Shown: positions 30,444-46,405 of the stretch, piece after piece
Layout: every line of letters starts with the position of its first letter
Position numbering within the stretch: position 1 is the first letter of the stretch
DNA from: Lama glama
Lineage: Eukaryota
Assembly (NCBI GenBank): GCA_028534125.1
Contig: CM052849.1
Coordinates: 19,778,001 to 19,842,000 of the forward strand
DNA: 64,000 nucleotides
Direction: 5' to 3'
The notes under the pieces: generated by a model
What the model was told of the DNA's origin: nothing
Database searches by the model: none
The model's input: only the letters and a program-made list of their open reading frames with translations
Translations under genes and position numbers: made by a program

Positions 30444-31020
30444 TGAAACCGAGCAGGACCCTACAGGGCCTTCCTGGGGACAGGACCCCCTCCCCACCAT
30501 CCCCTGCCTCTTATTTGTAGAAAAAGTTCAGCCTTTTAGGCCTTTCCTGAGTTCTAAAGAGCAAATTTAATCAGAGAAGTGAGAAAAATACAGAAACAAA
30601 GGCAAATAGTCAAGCAAGATGAAATAATAGTTTAGCTGTAAAGCAATGCCAAGGACCCTTCACTCCTCCTCAAGGGCTGAGGACGATATCCTGAGAGTTG
30701 TTCTGCAGATGCTAAAACCCCCACCAGGTGGAGGAAGTTCACTGCTGACCACCAGCACACAGACCCCAGACCGGCTGGCGCCAGAAGGCCCACCCAGTTA
30801 CCTCACCACCAGCCAATGAGAAGCACGCCCATGAGATGATCAGGCCCCCTGTGGCCCCTCCCTCACCTTGTTTTTAAAGGCCCCTTCCCTAAAAGCCATA
30901 GGGGAGCTCCGGTCTCCTGAACACAAGCCGCCGGTTCTCCTTGCTGGGCGCCTGCAATAAATGCTGTGCTTTCCTTCACCACGACCTGCTGCGCGCAGAC
31001 TGGCTTTGCTGCCAGGTTCA
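30444..31020 (+). mobile_element. Solo ERV1-type LTR
   Basis: Starts TGAAACCGAGCAGGACCC; CCAAT at 30813-30817, TATA-like TTTTTAAA near 30870, AATAAA at 30956-30961, in U3-R-U5 order. Confidence 0.75.
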
Positions 31021-31045
31021 CGGGGAGCAGGGGCTCGCTGCTCAC

Positions 31046-31214
31046 CTATTTTCTCCACAGGTGTGTTCAGAGGGAGGAAGCCTTGTCTGAGAAGCTGGTC
31101 CATCATCTCCTCGTCGTCTGCTTGGATTTCGGAGACCATGTTGCAAGGAATAAGGCCGAGCCGGGCACAGGTCTCCCCGCGGTAGAAGCCATCAGCATCC
31201 TTATCCCCGTAAAC
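31046..31214 (-). CDS. RIMBP2: RIMBP2 exon VYGDKDADGFYRGETCARLGLIPCNMVSEIQADDEEMMDQLLRQGFLPLNTPVEKI (SH3-2)
   Basis: ctgcag| acceptor, G|gtgagc donor, 169 nt. Confidence 0.97.
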
Positions 31215-31229
31215 CTGCAGTGTGAGAAG

Positions 31230-31780
31230 CGGGAGGAAGGCGCTGGGGGCTCGGGAGCACATCGGCTCTGCCGCGAGGCCAGCGGACGTGCGGAGCACCG
31301 GAAACACGTGTGCGTAGCCCTGCCGCAAACCTGCCTCCCCAGGAGCGCGTTTCGGCCCCGGGCCTCCCTCCCCGCCGGGGCTGCCGGCCCAGGCCGGGGC
31401 TCCGCGCAACGCGCGCGCGCCCGAGAGCCCACGCACGCTGAGGCCCGCCCCGCGCGCACGGGCCGCCGCGGCCGCACGTCCCGCCTCCGGCCGCAGCAAA
31501 CGGTTCCCCCGGAAGGAGGCGGTGCCACTGCCGGGCATTCTGAAGTGAGTCATCTCCACGGGCAGACTGCGCGTGGCACTCCGCGGGGTGAGCGCCGCTG
31601 TCCTTCAAAGGCCGTTTCACTGACCAGCATCAGGACCACTACGAACGGCGAGTCACCAGCGCCCCGTCGCCCCTCCGTCCCCCGGGAGCACCGCTCTGCG
31701 CCGGCTGCGGCGCGCCGCCCCTCCCCTCCCCCGCAGGTTAAGGCGCCGGCTGCGGCGCGCCCCCCGCCCGCCCGGCCGTG
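31230..31780. promoter_or_regulatory. CpG-rich intron between the two SH3-2 exons, with a 19-bp direct repeat GCGCCGGCTGCGGCGCGCC
   Basis: Dense CpG; repeat copies at 31698 and 31743. Confidence 0.55.
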
Positions 31781-31787
31781 CCCCCAC

Positions 31788-31972
31788 CTTGATGATCTGC
31801 CCTTCCTTGAAGGGCAGCTCCTCCTCTGCGGCATCTGGGTTCGGGGACATGGTGAGGGGGTCGTAGTCGAAAAGAGCCACAAAGATGCGCGCCTGCAGCT
31901 CCTCCGCACCGGGGTCCGTCTCTGACTCCTCGTAGAAGTCCGGGGAGAGCCGGCCGCGACCTCTGTATTCAT
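31788..31972 (-). CDS. RIMBP2: RIMBP2 exon (D)EYRGRGRLSPDFYEESETDPGAEELQARIFVALFDYDPLTMSPNPDAAEEELPFKEGQIIK (SH3-2)
   Basis: ccgcag| acceptor, AAG|gtgggg donor, 185 nt. Confidence 0.97.
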
Positions 31973-34900
31973 CTGCGGGCGGGTGGGGTGAAGGACAGGT
32001 GCTGGTGATGCCTGCCGGCCACCCCGCACCACGACCCAGCCATCCCCCACCCGCGACCGGGGACGTCCGCTGGCACATGAAATGCGTTTTGGAAAGTGAG
32101 GGGAATGGATTTGGCACTTTAACTTTTGTCTTGAAAAGACAAAAACATTCCTTACTGTGCAAGCGGGAATGATCACCTCGACAGATAGCTCAGAAAAGCA
32201 AGTAACATATAAAACCCAGGCAGCAGGGTGACTCCAGCCACGAGGCAGGTGAAGGCAGCAGGAGACAAGGACACTGTGCCAGTGACCCCTGCAAAGCAGG
32301 CATGAGGGACGGGAGGGCGGCCACCGGGTCAGGCCCAGAGACCCAGGATGTGCTTGTAACAGGCGGGCACTCGGGAGGTCTGCAGTGCACGCGCTCACTG
32401 GCCGCAGCCTGAGACCGGGGCCCACGCTGCCCCCTCAGCTCTGAATACTAAGTGGCCGTAAGTGCACCCGTCACTGCAGTGAGCCAACGGCCTCCTGGCA
32501 GAGTCGAGTTTCAAGTCCACCCACCACCCAGCTTTTTGAAACCCTAGTAATACCCATGCATGGTATCATCATAGACATGTGCACATCTCACCATCCACGG
32601 GTCTGTACTAGGAAACGAGGGTCGGCCAGCAGAGAATACCATTCCGACCTCACGAGAGGGCTCAGAACATCAGTGGGAAGTAAATGAGAACCACTCCAGC
32701 CCTCGGAACAAGCCAGCCTGCCCGGGAAAACTCGTCACCAGCTCACAAGCACAGGAGGAGGGAAGAGGCCAAGGGGTGGGAAGACAGGAGAGGCGCTGGG
32801 GAAAAAGCCAGGAAACCCACTTCTTTCACCGGCAGACACGTTGAGGTGAAAAAGAGCCTATTTTTTTTCACGCAGGAAAGACTGACTTTTTTAAATGCAG
32901 TGAACTAGGGGGCGGGGAGAGCTGGGAGGTAAAGCACGCGGCCCGGCGCGCGAGGTCCTGCGCTCGCTCCCCACCTCACGCCGATGTCATGGTTTTGAGT
33001 CTGGTACGTGTGGAGCTACATAATCTTTGTCTTTTTGATTCAAGAGGGGCTTTTATTTTTAATTGAGGAAACCTAGAGCATATTAAAAGGTACAGCATTT
33101 TTTGTGAATGCATTGCTTATTAAAAATACATTTAGAAAGGATACAGTCTGCAGATTTAAGTTCCTCTGGAAAAAAAAATGGGTGCTTTTCGAGTCCAGCC
33201 GAGTTCTGGGCTGTTCATTACTGCCCCCGCACAAGGAAGCATAACCACCCGGGGCTGGCCGAGACCGGCCTGCTGGCGCGTCGCTGACCGTGCTGTCCCC
33301 CCCCACCCCCCGGGTCTGGGGCAGGGCTCTCCTCTTTTTTGGTGGCTGCTGGACACACTTCACTCTCGTCCTTCGAAAATACAGCAGGCCGTCCGGTCCG
33401 TGCGCGAGCCGTGCATGCGCGTTTAGAGCCGACACTGACTGTGCCTGCGGTGTGCTTTCTGGCCCTGCTGCCCGGTAAGGGGTCGGGCGCAGTCGCGGCA
33501 GCCCTGTCGTGGGCTTATGGAGTGCTTTTTTGAGTTATAAAGAGGCCTTTTGTTAAGGTGTTAGCAGAGCATCACTCCTCCTGCGAACCTGGCTGGCGTC
33601 TCACTAGGAGGAAGACAACCCTGACCCAAGGGCACTCAGAGACACTGATTCCGCCTTTACTCCCTCGTCCAGGTGCCGGCGGGAAGCACCGTCATTTTCT
33701 ATTCTTGGACTTTCCTTCTCTGTCCCAGGAGCCTGGAGGAGGCGGCCACCAGACCTCCCCCAGAGGACACCCCTTCCAGGGCCACGACGTGCACTGCCCA
33801 CCGGGGAACAGGGGCCGTTCGTGCAGAGGGCAGTGCCTGTGGTCGTCACTCGTCAAAGTCATAACCAAGTGAGGGCTTGGAGACCACGTTCCACAGGAGG
33901 AACAGCCTCGGACCGGCCCCACCTGGTTCCTAAAGACGGTCGGTCCTGGCACGTCATTTCCGTTTTAAGCCAGGGGACCAGCCCCGACCTGTGCAGCTGT
34001 CCCCGAGGGAACCACACAGGGGAACTGAGGCCTGAGGGGGCGGTGCGAGCTCACAGCCGTCAGGAGCCACGAAGGCTCGGGACGCCCCCGCTCTGAGGGC
34101 GCCCAGCGTCCTCCCTGCCTGTGCAGGTTTTGTTATTTTTCAGCTAACTGAAAATACTGTTTTTAAGACTCTTTAACGGTCTATGAAATTTTTACTGATA
34201 AAAATAAACACATCCTAAAAACTATAAAGATGGAAAAGCAAACTTTCCCCGTTGTTTGGAGCCTCGGGGGACCTGCACTGCCTTTAAAAGGCCTTCATCA
34301 TTTTGGCTGACGTGAGCGGAGACCGGTTGAGCCGGAGCCGCTCCCGCATGGCCGGGACTGTGTTCCGGGTCTCCCCGGGCTTTGCGGTTCCCTGCTTTGT
34401 CTCACATGTGTGAGCGTGCTGACTGCCAGGCTCTGTGGTCCCGCCTGTGATACTGTCTGGGACTGTTTGGGCCGCAGTTGGTCCCAGTGCTGGCCAGGGG
34501 GATTCCCATCCGACCTTCAGCCACGCTTCCCCTCGGGCAGATTGGTTAGAATGAGCAGAATGACAGCTTTCAGCACTGCTGGCTGAATTCCAAAAAGTGA
34601 TTAAGGGAATGGAAACAGCCGCCAGAGGGTGACTTGGGAACAGCGGGTGACCAGATGGACGGGGGCAGCACACCCTTCCCGAGACACATCTGGGCCTCCT
34701 GGTGCTTTTCACAGCTTCAGTTCCAGGTGCCGAAGCGCTGCACGCATTCGGATAGCTCTGCGTCTGCACGGGGCCTGTGCAGACACCGGGAGCCCGGCCA
34801 CCACCCCTGCCTCCGCTGCCCTCACCATGGGCATCTCAGCAGTGCGTGAACGGGACCCCGCGGGACGGCCCTTTACCATCTCTTCAATGCTCCCACCGGC

Positions 34901-35152: not shown

Positions 35153-35270
35153 CGGTAGCGAGGCCCATCACTGGCCGGGACCTGTGGGGGCCAGCGCTGC
35201 CGCGGGACAGCCTCCGGGCCACACGATCCGCCCTCCCAGCCCGTCCTGCAGACGCCGGGTTTCCTAAAAT
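35153..35270 (-). CDS. RIMBP2: RIMBP2 exon ILGNPASAGRAGRADRVARRLSRGSAGPHRSRPVMGLAT
   Basis: tcttcag| acceptor, G|gtcagt donor, 118 nt, phase 0 to 1 matches the next exon. Confidence 0.92.
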
Positions 35271-36709
35271 CTGAAGACAAAACAACAACAAAGTCAGAAG
35301 GCTTGGCAGCCGTGGGAACCGAAGGGTCAAGTCAGCCCAGTCAACCCCACTTGGAAGCACAAGCTCTAAAGGCAACTAAACGTAGCTTTTAACTGAAAGG
35401 TTAGCTGAAGGGCCCGAGAGGGGAGCGCTCGGTCCAGGCGCTCGCCTCTGCGCGCGGCTGCTCTGCGATCGTGGGGGCGGGGCAGAGAAGCCCCGGGAGG
35501 CATCTTTTTTGCTGCTACTGCTGCTGAAGCCAGATATTTTGAACCAAAGTGAGAGTTGCTTAAATACACCTCCTTCCTGGTCTCAGGGCAGCCTGCCCAC
35601 CTCCAGTGACCACAAAAGTGGGGGAAACACGGCATTTCCGAACGCCCTGCTTGGACAAAGCTGTACATGAGGCTCCCGAAAGCTCAGGGACGGACATTCC
35701 CGTGTGTTGTCAGCTTTGACGCTCAGGGCAGCGTCTTGGCCCACATCCGGACACAATAGTCACCCAAGCGGCTCTGCTTCACAGATATGTGCACCTCTGA
35801 TCTGCACTAAAGGTTAGCATCGTAAAAGAGAATCAAACCAAAACCTCCAGCTCCCTGGCGCTGGGAGTCAGGAAATTTTCAGGGAGCCAGGGGATGAATC
35901 CGGGCTGGGAGTTCTGGTGCTCAGCGTGTTCCAGGCGGGGAACAAACAGGCTGTGGCCTGTGGGGCCGGCGCCCTCTTGTGGCCAGGTCGCAAACTGCAC
36001 CGGCTCAGGCCCAGGCCTGGCACCCAGGGGGGTCTCACCTGTGTTTTCAGGGAAAAGTCCAGCATGACAGGAAGGAGGACACAATAGGGAGATGAATGAA
36101 GCCTGGAGGGAGTCCCTGCTCTTGAACACACTACCACGCCTGGAAGACAAGGCACGGGATGTGTCTAGAGCTGATGATGGAAAATTCATTCTGAAAACTG
36201 GTCGCAGGAAAGAAACAGGAAAAAAAAAACAACAACAAACCTTTTGGAACAAAGGCAAAAATGAATCTCTTCAATAACTGTTCTCCGTTTTTTCTAGTTA
36301 TAAAGGCCCAAACCAACCACAACAAAAAACCAAAACCACAACAAGAGAAAAACCTTCAGTCCCACCATAAAGTCAAAAGTAAGGCCCTGTGGTTCGTTTT
36401 GGAAAGTACGTGTTGCCAAACTTCTGGATAATCGTAGTTCAGCTAACCCTTAATTAAAATTTAGATTCAGTTGTCCTTTAATTAAAGCAGCCATAATCAT
36501 CACTGATTTGGGAGTGGGGGAATCATTATTCTAAAGCAAAGAAAAGAAATCATCGCATGGTCAAAAGACATGGAAGCTGAATAAAGCAAAGATGCACGGA
36601 GCGCTGAAGCGAGCCGGCAGACCCCCAGGATGGACACCAACATAAACCAGCAGGGTGAGAAGATGGACTGGGCTGGCAGGCAGATGTGAGGGGAGGCCAC
36701 GTCACACAC

Positions 36710-37333
36710 CCGGGGGGGCGGCTGCGCGTGCTGGGCAGTGGCCCTGCTGTCGGGCACGTCTGAGCTCTTCCTCCAGGCATCCTGGGCATCTTCGGGACCC
36801 GCGGGCTCCTCCCAGCCGCACTTGCCGGGGCGGGGTCTCTCTGGGCTCGGGGGGGCGTCCTCGCTCCTGGGGACGCCGCCGGGCTCCTCTTGCTCCCCAA
36901 AGTCCTCTTCGATGCTGCTCTGCCGGGTCAGCGTCCGGCGCCGGGCCAGCAGGGGCCTCGGGCCTCTCCTGCTGGGACAGCGCCCGGGGCCCGGGCTGCA
37001 CGGGGCAGCCGTGCTTCGGAAGCTGAACCACAGCTCCTCCTCTTCACTGCCACAGTCCAGGCCGCTGTCTGGGCTCCGGGTGGCCGAGCGGCTGAACCGA
37101 CAGCCTCTGTCTTCCAGAAGGAAGTCGCCGGCGGCCCTGCGCTCTGCGGGGAACCTGGGCATGCTGGCCCTGGAGGAGTGCCCTACGCCCTGCTTGTGCG
37201 AGAGCTCGCAGCGCTCTGCGTCCTCCTCCGCCACTTCGGGGATACTGAAAAGTTTCTTACTGTGGTGGGTGTGCTGGGGGTACCCGGGGAGTTCCAAGAA
37301 AGCTGCCTCAGGGGTCCTATTCCTAGGGCACTC
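36710..37333 (-). CDS. RIMBP2: RIMBP2 long in-frame cassette exon (208 aa, ECPRNRTPEAAFLE...KKLFSIPEVAEED...RSPDSGLDCGSEEEE...RRRTLTRQSSIEEDF...QPPPR)
   Basis: ctgtcag| acceptor, CGG|gtgtgt donor (weak), 624 nt, phase 0-0 between phase-0 neighbours, open frame with protein-like motifs; not in the canonical ~1050-aa human sequence as I recall it. Confidence 0.75.
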
Positions 37334-39831
37334 CTGACAGGGGCGGTGTGTGAGGACGGGTGCCAGGAAACAGCGTATGATCAGACATGAAGCGGGCAGA
37401 GGAAGGAGAGAAAACACAGACAGAATTAGTCTCCGAGGCGATGAGGGGCGGAAAGCATGCTTGTACCCATGGGGGGCGATGGCACGCGCTGGCCAGGCTC
37501 TGAGATGAGAACAGAATGGGTGGGGCGGATGTGCCGGGGCAGGGGAGGGGCACACGCAGGGGCCAAGGCCACCTGCAGGGACAGCCATGCAGCTCAACCA
37601 AGGACAGAGCGGCAGCTGGGGCGCGAGGAGCTGGGCGCAGGAGGCTTCACGGTGACTCAGGCGCTGGGTTCTGCGAGGCGGCTGTGCCGGACGGGGGCGG
37701 GGGCACCTGAGCCCACTACCCTCTGGCTGCACCCTCAGAAACTCAGAAGGCAGCAGCTGTGGGGTGCTGGTGGCTGAAGACAATTCACAAAAGTGACCCA
37801 ACTGAACCGCCAGGACCCTCGCTGCTGGAGGTCATCCCAGCACTCGGCACCCCCTGACATCCAGTCTGGTCTGCTGACCTACCACCACTCTCCCTGGCTT
37901 GGGTGTGAGCGTGTGAAACTGGGGACCTGGGCGCTGAGCCCCCATCCTGGTCCTAGGAGGTCTGTGCTCCATCCACGTCTGTCCCTCTGGCACGCCTGGA
38001 CTCCAGGCCCTGAACGAGCAGCCGCGCCCCCGCCAGCATGGGCTGCAGGGCCCGGCCTGGGAACAGCCACCCAGAGGTGGCCTGACGAACGTCAGGGGTG
38101 GACACAACTGCCCGCCCATCCTTGCATGTGGTTCTCTCTGCAGGGACCTCCCTCGGCCCAGTCCTCTGCTCCCGTGGAACCAGGAGTCCCTCTTCGCGGA
38201 CTCCAGGAAGCCAAGCCCTGCCTTTCGTCCTGTCAGAGAGGCGCTGCACCGCGGGGGACAGCGCACAGGAGCTCTGGGGTCTGCAGCCCCCGCCGCCCCG
38301 CCAGCCCGCAGCCCTGCGCGCAGGACCTGGCAGTTTGCCTGGTGCAGCAGCACCTGCTGAGCGCCTGGGGCCCCGAGTGCCGGGCAAGGAGGCGGGCGGC
38401 ACATGCTTCTCTCATGGATGTCTGTTCTGGGGAGTGTCGGGGAACAGGCAGCGAGGGAGCAGGGCGGACCCCCAGACTGCGTCTCCCCGCAGCTCTGACC
38501 TCCCCGTGGCTGCTCTGGGGCCAGGGCGGTGCTCGTGCGGCTGGGTTGGCCTTTCTCCCTGCCCTCTTCTTTCCACACAATCCACAGAAGTACGACCCCA
38601 GGAGCGGCCCCCGCCCAGAGGATGGGAGGGAAGCTGACACGCTTCACCAGCCCCGCCATGAGCCCTGCGGGCAGCTGGGGAAGCAGGGGATTGAGTGGCC
38701 GGTCAGGCGGGACCACCGGCAGCTTGGGGCCTCCCTCCGGCAAGAAGGGTCCCTGTGAATCCTGCTGGACGGTGGCTCCGGGTGGCCAGGGCAGGGGGAG
38801 GAGCAGGAGCCGCAACCGTGCAGGTCTGCATAGCGACCTGGCATGCTCTCTGGGGGCGGAGCGTCTCCAAGGCCCTGCAGGGGCCTCTGCTGGGAAAACG
38901 GAAGTCAGTCTGCTCTGTGCAAGTGGGCACCGAACTGGTAGCCAGATTTGGGCGCTGCTTTCTGTCCACCATTCAAAACGCACGGCTCCGCGTCCTCCGA
39001 GAAGGCCTGGGGCCGGGCGCGGCAGCCCCAGCAGGGTTCCCCCCACCGAGGCCTTACTCAGTTGAGAACCCGTGGGCCGCACCAGCTCTCCTGCCCTTTG
39101 TCTGTCTACCCCCCAGGCTGGGAGCAGCTGCAGGGCAGGGGCCACGTCCATCCTCACCCCCAGCCGCGACCAGCTCGTGCCGGGCGAACAGACGTCCAGC
39201 AAGAAAGGCCAGCAGCAGCCGTGGCAGCACAACTCCCAGGGGACCAGGACGCACACCCAGGGCGGCTTCTTCAAGCTCAGTCTCTGCTAAGGTGACCCCC
39301 CCCCCAAATCAAACCCCCGCTGACGGCCACACCAGAGGCGGAAGCAGAGGGTGCAGGATCTGTCTCTGGTGGGAGGTGCCTGGAAAGGGGCTTGTGTGTG
39401 GACCCCCCTGTCCTCCAGGACGGCCGACCCTCCTCTGACCTCCTTCCGTGCCCCTCTCCCAGCCCCCGGCAGGGCCTGCCTCGGCTCACCCCACCACGGG
39501 GCCTCCGCACGGCCCCAGCTGGTCCCCCACGCGCCACAGTCTTTGTTCTATTCTTTTCAATTCAGTTCTTAGTACAAATTGGGGTGTCCCTGGGAAGTGC
39601 CAGCTGGATTCTCCCAGACTCCTTCAGCTAGGCTTGTGGCAAAGAGGAGGGACAGGAGGGCCGGGGAGAGCCCGAGTGCAGATTCAATAGTGAGAAAGCA
39701 GCCCACCCACGTCTGCGGGCTCTGCTTGCTGGGCAAGGCCCCTCTGGGGCTGGCCTGGCGCCCCAGCAAAAGGAGGGGATGGGATGCCGGCAGGGCCGGC
39801 GTGGAGGGACCCGGTGCCCCTGCGCACTGAC

Positions 39832-39990
39832 CTTGAGAGCGTTGTGGGCCGCGCCGCTGGGCCGCCGCCGGCCCCCGTCTTCCAGCTGCATCTCAGAGCA
39901 GAGCTCCTCCTCGTCCTCCTCCATGATGTCGGACAGGTCAGACCCCCGGCTGCTCTCCGTGTGGTAGTCATCTCCGTGGCCACAGTGCGG
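39832..39990 (-). CDS. RIMBP2: RIMBP2 exon PHCGHGDDYHTESSRGSDLSDIMEEDEEELCSEMQLEDGGRRRPSGAAHNALK
   Basis: ccccag| acceptor, AAG|gtcagt donor, 159 nt. Confidence 0.96.
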
Positions 39991-45123: not shown

Positions 45124-45275
45124 CCTCTGCCCTTTCGCGTACACGCCATAGCCGGTGACGTTGGCCCCGTTGGACAGTCCGGTAGCCGTTAGGGCGGGCG
45201 GTTTCCAGGACACCTGGACGGTGGCTGGGGTGGCCCCGGCTTGGACGGTGATGTCTTGTGGGGGGGCTGGAGGAC
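45124..45275 (-). CDS. RIMBP2: RIMBP2 exon (G)PPAPPQDITVQAGATPATVQVSWKPPALTATGLSNGANVTGYGVYAKGQR (FN3-3)
   Basis: ccgcag| acceptor, AGG|gtgagt donor, 152 nt. Confidence 0.96.
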
Positions 45276-46405
45276 CTGCGGGGCAGAGGCAGAGAGATGT
45301 TCACAACACGGCCCTTTGGCAGCCGAGCCGCTAAGGCTGGTGGCACCTGGAAGATGGTGGCATCTTTCAGCGAAGCCTCTGGGGAAGGAGGGAGAAGAGG
45401 AGAGGTGGAATAGAGTGGGGGGCGGGGCGGAGCAGCAGCTCCCAGGGGCCCCACGGTGCCCCTTGAACTCCTGCTCACTGACCTCCGTCTCCACGGCAGC
45501 CTGTGACCCCAGCCTGGCCAGTCAGCCATGAGACGCCCCCTCCACCGTCACCTCTCCCCTCCTCTTCTGCACCACCACCCGCTGCCCCCTAACCCCGGCC
45601 CTCCCTCTCTCCAGCAAACTTGGGAGCATGTAGGCTGGACCACACATCACCCATCTTGCCACCTCGCTGGCGAGGACAAAGCGGAAAGCTGGAGAGAGAC
45701 AGGTTCTGACGAGGCCCGAAACTGGACCTGGCTCTGCACACCCAGCAGCCCCAGCTGACCCGCTTCTTCTGTGCCCAAACCACCTTGAACCGTGCTCACT
45801 GGGTCTCCCGAGACCGTCCTAGGCGGTCACTCCCAGCAACAAGGAGGCAAGGGTCACGTCGCCGGTCACCCCATCAGCTCCTGGTCTCACTCAGCAGGAG
45901 GGCCCGTCTGCACCCCAATCCATGGGCGCCTCCCTTTCCTCTGGTGCAAAACTCCCGGCACCCTTGTGTCTGAAGTATGGAAACTTATATTTGGAAAGGA
46001 ACGTAGAGGTATCAGGGGGAAGGCCATGAGCTTCACGTCCTCCAAGGCCTCGCTCAGGCAGGTCCTGGGGGCGGCTTGGTGGGGAGGGACGGCTGCAGGC
46101 TGAGGATGTCTTACGCGCCACTCCTAGTTTCGGATGCTTTACATCCCTCGATCCAAACAGCCCTGCAAGTTCCTCCTCAGCTTGCAAAGGAGGAAGTTAA
46201 GGTCGCAGGGAAGCCGCTCGCTATCAAGTGCTGGCGGCAGGACTCACACCAGCGCTCGCCTGCGGCTCATCTGCAAAGGAAGGTGCAACTCCACCCTCAG
46301 CACGTGGCGGGCGATACTGGGCTTCGGAGCTCCTGCCCAGCCTGGTTCAGAAGTTACACTCCACCTGGACAGTCCACTCAAACAGGACAGACAGCCTTGT
46401 TACGC

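What the first reader, a model, noticed from the sequence alone, without database searches (positions are those of the whole stretch)
36710..37333. 624-nt RIMBP2 cassette exon that looks like a plug-in phospho-regulation module
Seen: an intact phase 0-0 exon adding 208 disordered-looking residues between FN3-3 and SH3-2. It carries three well-formed short linear motifs for a phosphatase, a kinase and a ubiquitin ligase (listed as separate findings). It is absent from the canonical human sequence as I recall it, though longer vertebrate RIMBP2 forms exist. Known: RIMBP2 couples Cav channels to RIM, Munc13 and Bassoon at active zones. Inference: splicing could switch on activity-dependent signalling and turnover of this scaffold. 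This is the best candidate here for an under-described system.
Basis: partly seen in the sequence, partly recalled or inferred. Interest (0 to 1): 0.75.

Follow-up and report, generated by a model that had tools for sequence, protein, structure and literature searches.

The report
Conserved alternative linker exon of RIMBP2
This is a real, ancient optional exon of the synaptic scaffold gene RIMBP2 that adds a floppy 208-residue linker carrying three short, almost unchanging motifs, already present in database gene models but apparently never studied.

Summary
Window 37333 to 36710 (minus strand) is a 624-nt open segment with an AG acceptor, a GT donor and phase 0-0. It lies between the RIMBP2 linker exon ending ..HNALK and the exon starting ILGNP...

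It is a real exon. The same peptide sits at the same place in 59 named RIMBP2 models from teleosts to placentals.

Conservation is concentrated in 30 residues, which are 97% identical, against 39% for the other 178. They form three motif islands:
- an LxxIxE-type island, SIPEVAEE;
- SPDSGLDCGSEEE;
- TLTRQ.S.EEDF.

AlphaFold2 gives pLDDT 54 and no secondary structure, and Pfam finds nothing.

The "plug-in phospho-module" reading is plausible but untested:
- The PP2A-B56 and basophilic-kinase patterns fit.
- The strict beta-TrCP pattern is met in 0 of 44 sequences; only an extended DSG(X)4S form fits.
- Ten paper searches found nothing on this exon, but the two most relevant papers were not held.

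The scan has no earlier report of this on other DNA. Verdict: a known annotated exon carrying an undescribed motif module, of moderate interest.

The parts
36710..37333 (-). 624-nt RIMBP2 linker exon, 208 codons, phase 0-0
   Evidence: Translation; sequence; homology to named RIMBP2 proteins; tblastn placement
37334..37375 (-). 3' splice site: AG at 37335-37334 with a pyrimidine-rich tract and branch-point-like CTGAT/CTCAC upstream
   Evidence: 0.725 pyrimidines in the 40 nt before the AG
36704..36709 (-). 5' splice site GTGTGT. Read-through models in gecko, two snakes and a teleost end in 'VC..', which is the translation of the same GTGTGY.
37220..37258 (-). Island 1, residues 26-38 KKLFSIPEVAEED; LxxIxE core LFSIPE at 37252-37235, followed by an acidic run
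   Evidence: LxxIxE-type pattern in 42 of 44 aligned sequences
37037..37075 (-). Island 2, residues 87-99 SPDSGLDCGSEEE; DSG(X)4S at 37069-37046, with an S-P site before it and an acidic CK2-like tail after it
   Evidence: 43 of 44 sequences; the strict DSG.{2,3}[ST] pattern is met in 0 of 44
36896..36958 (-). Island 3, residues 126-146 RPLLARRRTLTRQSSIEEDFG; L135, R137 and Q138 are invariant in 44 of 44; LxRxx[ST] and RRx[ST] patterns
39832..39990 (-). Upstream linker exon ending ..HNALK in phase 0. It carries its own LxxIxE (LSDIME) and an acidic run. The 5' end given here is approximate.
35153..35270 (-). Downstream exon starting ILGNP.. with a phase 0 acceptor
31785..31973 (-). First half of SH3-2
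31047..31220 (-). Second half of SH3-2
45124..45276 (-). First part of the third FN3 / Ig_RIMBP2 domain
   Evidence: PF25523, E 5.5e-20

Best explanation
Shown: this is the ortholog of a RIMBP2 coding exon that dates back at least to the common ancestor of ray-finned fishes and tetrapods. It inserts about 200-240 intrinsically disordered residues into the flexible tether between the FN3 core and the SH3-II/III pair. That pair binds RIM and calcium channels (a role known from the literature, not tested here). The exon length is a multiple of three and the flanking phases match, so it can be included or skipped without changing the frame.

Inferred: it works as a carrier of three short linear motifs.
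1. [KR]L[FH]SIPEVAE[ED] is an LxxIxE-type docking site for the B56 subunit of PP2A. It would be a second copy beside the LSDIME site of the preceding exon.
2. SPDSGLDCGSEEE is a multi-serine acidic cluster that becomes a phospho-dependent binding site or an extended degron.
3. R[RK][RK]TLTRQxS[IV]EEDF is a basophilic-kinase site, with T134 and S140 the likely acceptors. It fits PKA, CaMKII, PKD or AMPK-related kinases and may create a 14-3-3-type site.

Including the exon would thus put a kinase input and a docked phosphatase on the same tether. Phosphorylation of this isoform alone could then change its partners or its lifetime.
For: Anatomy:
- AG/GT, phase 0-0 and 208 open codons.
- Gene identity and exon order.

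Homology:
- 1 hit of 59 candidates, 9 of 174 and 55 of 392.
- All hits are RIMBP2 or unnamed SH3 proteins from placentals, a marsupial, birds, a turtle, snakes, a gecko, frogs, paddlefish, bowfin and teleosts.
- Identity to the window falls with phylogenetic distance: 73% in whale down to 27-45% in fishes.

Motif-type conservation:
- 30 island residues are 97% identical, against 39% for the other 178.
- LxxIxE is present in 42 of 44 sequences, DSG(X)4S in 43 of 44 and LxRxx[ST] in 43 of 44. All three occur together in 0.025% of 20,000 shuffles of the peptide.
- Across all 59 proteins, SIPEVA is found in 57, DSGLDCGS in 53 and L[TVI]RQ in 53.
- The window carries the commonest variant of each island.

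Disorder: pLDDT 54.1, pTM 0.13, no secondary structure; no Pfam family; no protein-atlas cluster above 0.79.

Optional use:
- Sources name multiple isoforms.
- Rat RBP2 numbering places residues 1-859 before SH3-II (PMC6092624). In long models ..HNALK ends near residue 803 and SH3-2 starts at about 990-1130.

Context: RIM-BP2 is phospho-regulated. Rimbp2-S554 falls by log2 1.86 on depolarisation of synaptosomes (PMC7995663, passage).
Against:
- The only expression hint is that 6 RNA-labelled runs from 3 studies hold 0.42-0.46 of the exon's sampled words. That could also be pre-mRNA, DNA carry-over or a relative.
- No binding, phosphorylation or turnover data exist for any of the motifs.
- The strict beta-TrCP pattern (as I recall it from ELM) is met in 0 of 44 sequences.
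- The window's exon lacks about 22 residues after residue 58 and the 6 residues (VADGPL / DAEDSL type) that other tetrapod models carry before the donor. Some local erosion has therefore occurred.
- The hedgehog model has a degenerate island 3, and the shrew model lacks the N-terminal part.
- 10 of the 15 bird models that I left out of the alignment lack one island by pattern. These may be partial models.
- Most hits are computational gene models, not cDNAs.
Confidence: 0.6

Rival explanations
1. The conserved islands are docking sites for a dedicated partner of the active zone or secretory machinery. They would bind by folding on the partner and would not be read by PP2A-B56, a basophilic kinase or an SCF ligase. 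The exon would then be an isoform-specific adaptor, not a phospho-switch.
For: - Island 2 is invariant over 13 residues in nearly all sequences, including C94 and G95. That is more than a degron or kinase site normally needs.
- The strict beta-TrCP pattern is not met.
- Single-motif patterns are common by chance: LxxIxE occurs in 17% and LxRxx[ST] in 18% of shuffles.
Against: - Serines, threonines and acidic or basic flanks make up most of the invariant positions. That is typical of phospho-motifs.
- AlphaFold2 sees no incipient helix or strand in any island.
- No candidate partner is known from the papers searched.
Confidence: 0.25
2. In this species, or in most tissues, the exon is constitutive rather than a cassette. 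The short form known from laboratory cDNAs would then be the minor or rodent/primate-biased variant.
For: - Models with the exon were found in every vertebrate class sampled.
- The splice sites look ordinary.
- RNA-labelled runs hold part of the exon.
Against: - Rat RBP2 numbering fits a form without the exon.
- Sources list several isoforms per species.
- The search was aimed at the exon, so it cannot show how common exon-less forms are.
- From memory, the canonical human and mouse entries lack it (no call checks this).
Confidence: 0.12
3. The exon is decaying in this lineage. It is still open by chance in G+C-rich DNA, but is rarely or never spliced in.
For: - There are two in-frame losses relative to other placentals: about 22 residues inside the exon and 6 at its 3' end.
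- Open frames are cheap here: 70% G+C, and a 480-codon open frame lies in the adjacent intron.
- Identity to other placentals is only 66-73%.
Against: - All three islands are intact and identical to the commonest vertebrate variants.
- All length differences are in frame.
- AG, the pyrimidine tract and the conserved GTGTGY donor are intact.
- CpG observed/expected in the exon (0.64) is above that of the flanking intron (0.40-0.54).
Confidence: 0.05
4. It is not an exon at all, only a chance open frame with chance AG and GT in a G+C-rich intron.
For: The G+C-rich context gives long open frames on both strands, for example 199 and 166 codons on the plus strand over the same place.
Against: The peptide aligns at E 2.9e-77 to a gray whale RIMBP2 and at E 5.3e-39 to a gecko RIMBP2, at the same position of the protein. 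It also aligns to 55 proteins.
Confidence: 0.01

Closest known systems
Annotated long RIMBP2 isoforms, e.g. sperm whale isoform X3 (XP_028335886.1, P0010), Peromyscus californicus isoform X5 (P0012), Python bivittatus isoform X3 (P0029), and many bird 'RIMB2' models
   Same: The same exon at the same place between ..HNALK and ILGNP.., with the same three islands.
   Different: The window's copy is shorter: about 22 residues are missing after residue 58 and 6 before the donor. These database entries are gene models, and I found no paper that studies the insert.
LxxIxE docking motifs for PP2A-B56 (pattern and examples recalled, not from a call)
   Same: L-x-x-I-x-E in a disordered region with an acidic run downstream, conserved in 42 of 44 sequences.
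   Different: Binding to B56 is untested. The serine lies at position 3, not in the S-P arrangement of the strongest known sites (recalled).
SCF-beta-TrCP phosphodegrons: DSGxxS core, and the extended DSG(X)4S form reported for CDC25A (recalled)
   Same: D-S-G followed by a second serine, acidic surroundings, disordered context.
   Different: The spacing is four residues, so the strict pattern fails in 44 of 44 sequences. The invariant stretch is much longer than a degron. No turnover data exist.
Tissue-regulated alternative exons that encode disordered, motif- and phosphosite-rich segments (a general class, recalled from the splicing literature)
   Same: Frame-preserving exon, disordered product, conservation confined to short motifs.
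   Different: At 624 nt it is far longer than typical regulated cassette exons. Tissue regulation is not shown here.

Membership tests
RIMBP2 coding exon (long-isoform linker exon) | Lies between RIMBP2 exons, on the same strand and in the right order | tested here: met
   tblastn of P0001, P0002, P0003 and P0004 on the window; Pfam Ig_RIMBP2 and SH3_2 on the flanking exons
RIMBP2 coding exon (long-isoform linker exon) | Its peptide is found at the same position in named RIMBP2 proteins of other species | tested here: met
RIMBP2 coding exon (long-isoform linker exon) | Canonical splice sites and a frame compatible with its neighbours | tested here: met
RIMBP2 coding exon (long-isoform linker exon) | Present in spliced RNA of this species | not testable with these tools
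One search shows only that RNA-labelled runs hold 0.42-0.46 of the sampled words.
Cassette (skippable) exon | Length a multiple of three, with equal phases on both sides | tested here: met
   624 nt, phase 0-0
Cassette (skippable) exon | Transcripts both with and without the exon | tested here: inconclusive
   With the exon. Without it: only indirect evidence, from rat RBP2 numbering set against positions in long models, and from memory of the canonical human and mouse entries.
PP2A-B56 LxxIxE docking motif | Matches the pattern L..[IVLWC].E or [LMFYWIC]..I.E (pattern recalled) | tested here: met
   42 of 44 sequences; the 2 misses are models that lack that part of the exon
PP2A-B56 LxxIxE docking motif | Lies in a disordered, accessible region | tested here: met
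PP2A-B56 LxxIxE docking motif | Binds the B56 subunit | not testable with these tools
   Needs a binding assay
SCF-beta-TrCP phosphodegron | Core D-S-G, then 2-3 residues, then S/T (pattern recalled) | tested here: not met
   0 of 44 sequences. Only the extended DSG(X)4S form fits, in 43 of 44.
SCF-beta-TrCP phosphodegron | Both serines phosphorylated, with beta-TrCP-dependent turnover | not testable with these tools
   No data. Supplementary phosphosite tables were closed.
Basophilic-kinase phosphorylation site (LxRxxS/T, RRxS/T) | Consensus residues at -5, -3 and -2 relative to a conserved S/T | tested here: met
   LxRxx[ST] in 43 of 44 and RRx[ST] in 33 of 44 (teleosts have RKR/RRR shifted by one). 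L135, R137 and Q138 are invariant.
Basophilic-kinase phosphorylation site (LxRxxS/T, RRxS/T) | Observed phosphorylation | not testable with these tools
   The only site seen in text is Rimbp2-S554, which lies outside this exon.
Intrinsically disordered region | No stable fold predicted and no domain family | tested here: met

The most novel reading that the evidence does not exclude
Splicing gates a self-contained stability switch on an active-zone scaffold. Only the long RIM-BP2 isoform would carry a kinase-primed extended degron (SPDSGLDCGS-EEE). A PP2A-B56 docked about 55 residues upstream would hold it in check, and a basophilic-kinase site about 40 residues downstream would tune it. Neuronal or secretory activity could then remove or retain this isoform selectively at release sites.
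Probability: 0.12. Interest if true: 0.7.

Novelty: new member of a known kind. Interest (0 to 1): 0.36.

Why it matters
Judging by the rat RBP2 numbering in the one such paper whose numbering I saw, functional work on RIM-BP2 uses a form without this insert.

An insert whose three motifs have barely changed since the ancestor of ray-finned fishes and tetrapods is very likely to do something. Its position is on the tether between the FN3 core and the SH3 domains that hold RIM and calcium channels.

If the motifs recruit PP2A-B56, a kinase and a phospho-reader, this gives a concrete, testable route by which cell type (through splicing) and activity (through phosphorylation) could tune the coupling or the lifetime of this scaffold. 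It also tells experimenters that rescue constructs may lack a regulatory part.

It is not a new kind of system. Disordered, motif-bearing alternative exons are a well-known class, and the exon is already in public gene models.

Tried and rejected
1. Open frame as evidence: rejected. The region is 63-70% G+C and carries long open frames on both strands, including a 480-codon frame in the adjacent intron.

2. Hidden domain: none found. Pfam found 0 families. The protein atlas gave no cluster above 0.79, only generic disordered vertebrate fragments.

3. A VADGPL-type micro-exon in the downstream intron: a pattern scan found none. I now read the 6 residues as part of the exon's 3' end in other tetrapods, lost in frame in this window, with the GTGTGY donor kept.

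4. Splicing-regulator motifs around the exon. There are two GCATG sites upstream and none within 400 nt downstream, and nothing stands out. No conclusion was drawn.

5. CpG island or internal promoter at the exon. CpG o/e is 0.64, only slightly above the flanks, so this is not convincing.

6. Literature. Searches found no paper on this exon, its motifs or a long RIM-BP2 isoform.
- One search was badly built (it did not force the gene name) and gave nothing usable.
- I read passages only, using 'find', of PMC5496739, PMC9627664, PMC6960213, PMC1794582, PMC12462525, PMC7565545, PMC6092624, PMC6440020, PMC1775044 and PMC7995663.
- PMC6440020 lists a different, 70-nt Rimbp2 exon.
- PMC9627664 reports a rise in RIMBP2 protein linked to a regulated retained intron, without saying which intron.
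- Hibino 2002 and Mittelstaedt & Schoch 2007 are not held. They may already describe this exon. From memory, the chick RBP2 cDNA is long enough to contain it.
- Supplementary tables, which might list phosphosites or exon usage, were closed.

7. dN/dS: not possible, because no orthologous DNA of vertebrates is reachable with these tools.

9. The joined, spliced protein model was never built or searched. All work was done exon by exon.

10. Rows dropped before the counts on alignment A2: 16 of the 59 proteins. These were P0003 (a second gray whale model) and 15 further bird models (P0028, P0030-32, P0034-35, P0037-39, P0043-47, P0052), left out to limit the weight of birds. By pattern, 10 of those 15 lack one island.

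Full report
WHAT IS THERE. On the minus strand, window 37333 to 36710 reads as 208 codons without a stop. Upstream lies a pyrimidine-rich tract (0.725 pyrimidines in the 40 nt before the AG) and the AG at 37335-37334. Downstream follows GTGTGT from 36709. An open frame by itself is weak evidence here, for three reasons:
- the exon is 70% G+C;
- the surrounding 4 kb is 63-70% G+C;
- long open frames occur on both strands, including a 480-codon frame in the intron just upstream.

THE GENE AND THE NEIGHBOURS. tblastn of four homologs found later (P0001, P0002, P0003, P0004) places RIMBP2 exons on the minus strand in this order:
- an FN3 / Ig_RIMBP2 exon at 45276-45124;
- linker exons at 43796-43710, 42012-41863 and about 39990-39832;
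- the candidate exon;
- an exon beginning ILGNP at 35270;
- SH3-2 in two exons, 31973-31785 and 31220-31047;
- SH3-3 further downstream.

Pfam confirms Ig_RIMBP2 (E 5.5e-20) and the two halves of SH3_2. The upstream exon ends ..CTC AAG|gtcagt in phase 0. The downstream exon starts ..ttcag|ATT TTA GGA in phase 0. A 624-nt exon can therefore be included or skipped without changing the frame.

IS IT A REAL EXON? Yes.
- The exon peptide alone found one protein of 59 candidates, a 361-residue gecko RIMS-binding protein 2 fragment (E 5.3e-39, 48% identity over 96% of the query).
- The length window of the search tool hides full-length proteins, so I repeated the search with the 'region' option. A longer stop-free frame as carrier gave 9 hits of 174 candidates. 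The 719-residue gray whale hit as carrier gave 55 hits of 392 candidates.
- The hits are RIMBP2 models, many named as isoforms. They come from sperm whale, red deer, deer mouse, hamster, a bat, rabbit, pika, shrew, hedgehog, a field mouse, an opossum, many birds, a softshell turtle, pythons, a pit viper, king cobra, two frogs, paddlefish, bowfin and teleosts.
- In all of them the peptide sits between ..HN[AT]LK and [IL]LGN...
- Identity to the window falls with distance: 73-66% in most placental models (50-61% in the rabbit, shrew, hedgehog and field-mouse models), 57% in the marsupial, 49-56% in birds, 41-52% in reptiles, 35-37% in frogs and 27-45% in fishes. This is the pattern of vertical descent.
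- Against gray whale (P0002), the flanking exons are much more conserved than this one: FN3 94%, the ..HNALK linker exon 86% and the SH3-2 halves 83-95%, against 64% for this exon.

THE DONOR. Other tetrapod models carry six more residues (VADGPL in placentals, DAEDSL in birds) between the window's last residues and ILGNP. The window has no such extension and no micro-exon of that kind in the intron. Gene models that read through the donor in gecko, olive python, king cobra and the fish Goodea continue with 'VC..', the translation of GTGTGY. The window has exactly GTGTGT after its last codon. I therefore read the donor as conserved and the six residues as an in-frame loss in this lineage. A second in-frame gap of about 22 residues follows residue 58.

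WHERE THE CONSERVATION LIES. I aligned the window peptide with 43 of the 59 proteins. P0003 and 15 further bird models were left out to limit the weight of birds.
- Thirty residues in four runs are 97% identical to the window across the alignment. The other 178 residues are 39% identical.
- The runs are SIPEVAEE, SPDSGLDCGSEEE, TLTRQ and EEDF.
- L135, R137 and Q138 are invariant in 44 of 44 sequences.
- The window carries the commonest variant of each island.
- Across all 59 proteins, simple patterns find SIPEVA in 57, DSGLDCGS in 53 and L[TVI]RQ in 53. Ten of the 15 bird models left out lack one island, and most of them cover only part of the exon.

DISORDER. AlphaFold2 run on that alignment gives mean pLDDT 54.1, pTM 0.13, no residue at 90 or above and no secondary structure. 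Pfam finds nothing. The protein atlas returns only unrelated disordered fragments at 0.79 or below.

THE MOTIFS. The patterns used here were written from memory of ELM.
- LxxIxE type (PP2A-B56 docking): matches 42 of 44 sequences. The two misses lack that part of the exon. An acidic run follows the motif.
- Preceding exon: it has its own LxxIxE (LSDIME) with an acidic run. The insert would therefore add a second site.
- Strict beta-TrCP pattern (DSG, two or three residues, then S/T): matches 0 of 44.
- Extended DSG(X)4S form, which I recall from CDC25A: matches 43 of 44.
- LxRxx[ST]: matches 43 of 44. RRx[ST]: matches 33 of 44.
- In 20,000 shuffles of the window peptide, each single pattern is common (17%, 0.8% and 18%). 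All three together occur in 0.025% of shuffles.

The weight of the argument is not the match itself. It is that these residues stay fixed while the rest drifts.

IS IT OPTIONAL? The evidence is indirect.
- Sources name several isoforms per species.
- Pika isoform X2 joins ..EEDFEEQ directly to ILGNP, and several fish models are also short after island 3. The last third of the exon is therefore variably used.
- Sclip et al. 2018 (PMC6092624, passages) use rat RBP2 residues 1-859 as the part before SH3-II. In full-length long models ..HNALK ends near residue 803 and SH3-2 starts at about 990-1130. The laboratory rat cDNA therefore cannot contain the insert.
No call checks it.

RNA IN THIS SPECIES. 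The look-up of sequencing runs listed 24 runs, of which 20 hold part of the exon.
- Six runs on record as RNA, from three studies, hold 0.42-0.46 of the 59 sampled words.
- Six runs of unknown type from one organism label hold 0.76-0.95.
- So no junctions, no strand and no level are known. The identical share of 0.46 in several studies is unexplained.

LITERATURE. One search was badly built.
- None led to a paper on this exon, its motifs or a long RIM-BP2 isoform.
- Silbern et al. 2021 (PMC7995663, passage) show strong dephosphorylation of Rimbp2-S554 on depolarisation. The protein is therefore phospho-regulated, but at a site outside this exon.
- PMC9627664 (passages) reports an activity-dependent rise in RIMBP2 protein linked to a retained intron, which is not specified in the text seen.
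- Mittelstaedt & Schoch 2007 and Hibino et al. 2002 are not held and may already describe the exon.
- Supplements were closed.

HOW IT MOST LIKELY WORKS. Shown: this is an ancient, frame-neutral, disordered insert with three nearly invariant motif islands, on the tether between the FN3 core and SH3-II/III. Inferred:
- The insert is a motif carrier.
- PP2A-B56 docks at island 1.
- A basophilic kinase acts on T134 and S140 of island 3.
- The serine-acidic cluster of island 2 becomes a phospho-dependent binding site or an extended degron.

I put 0.95 on 'real conserved RIMBP2 exon', about 0.55-0.6 on 'phospho-regulated motif module', about 0.5 on B56 binding and about 0.2 on beta-TrCP.

VERDICT. 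The exon is already in public gene models, so the feature is not new. What is undescribed in the papers I could search is the motif module. Interest is moderate.

Noticed in passing
window 37832-39274, minus strand: A 480-codon stop-free frame lies in the intron just upstream of the exon. Its translation is rich in P, G, R, L and A and looks random, and there is no tandem repeat. It is probably a by-product of 65-70% G+C. No homology search was made.
   Followed up: partly
P0003, P0004, P0006, P0007, P0009: Five gene models (gray whale, a rodent and three teleosts) start within or just upstream of this exon and run on through SH3-2 and SH3-3. They are either fragmented annotations or a hint of an internal start that gives a short 'insert plus SH3-II/III' form.
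   Followed up: no
window 36710-37333 against other placentals: This genome's copy has two in-frame losses: about 22 residues after residue 58, and the 6 residues (VADGPL type) before the donor. All three motif islands are untouched.
   Followed up: partly
alignment A2, last third of the exon: Pika isoform X2 joins ..EEDFEEQ directly to ILGNP. Paddlefish, bowfin, medaka and killifish models are also short after island 3. The part behind the third motif looks variably spliced or poorly conserved.
   Followed up: no
window 39832-39990, minus strand: The preceding linker exon carries its own LxxIxE (LSDIME) followed by a long acidic run. It is conserved from fishes to mammals.
   Followed up: partly
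teleost models in A2: Several teleost models have an extra AYYKRQDLAEER-type peptide between ..HNTLK and the exon. Others lack it, which suggests a further small alternative exon in fishes.
   Followed up: no
window 31001-32000: The two SH3-2 exons lie in the most CpG-island-like part of the region: G+C 0.69, CpG o/e 0.88-0.91.
   Followed up: no
(sequencing runs): Seven runs from three studies hold exactly the same share (0.46) of the exon's sampled words. Four are labelled as reproductive-system RNA-seq. The cause is unknown; it could be a shared haplotype, a relative, or a partial transcript.
   Followed up: no
hedgehog isoform X3 (P0054) and shrew isoform X2 (P0033): In the hedgehog model island 3 is degenerate, and in the shrew model the N-terminal part of the exon is missing. 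This may mean relaxed constraint in these fast-evolving insectivores, or model errors.
   Followed up: no
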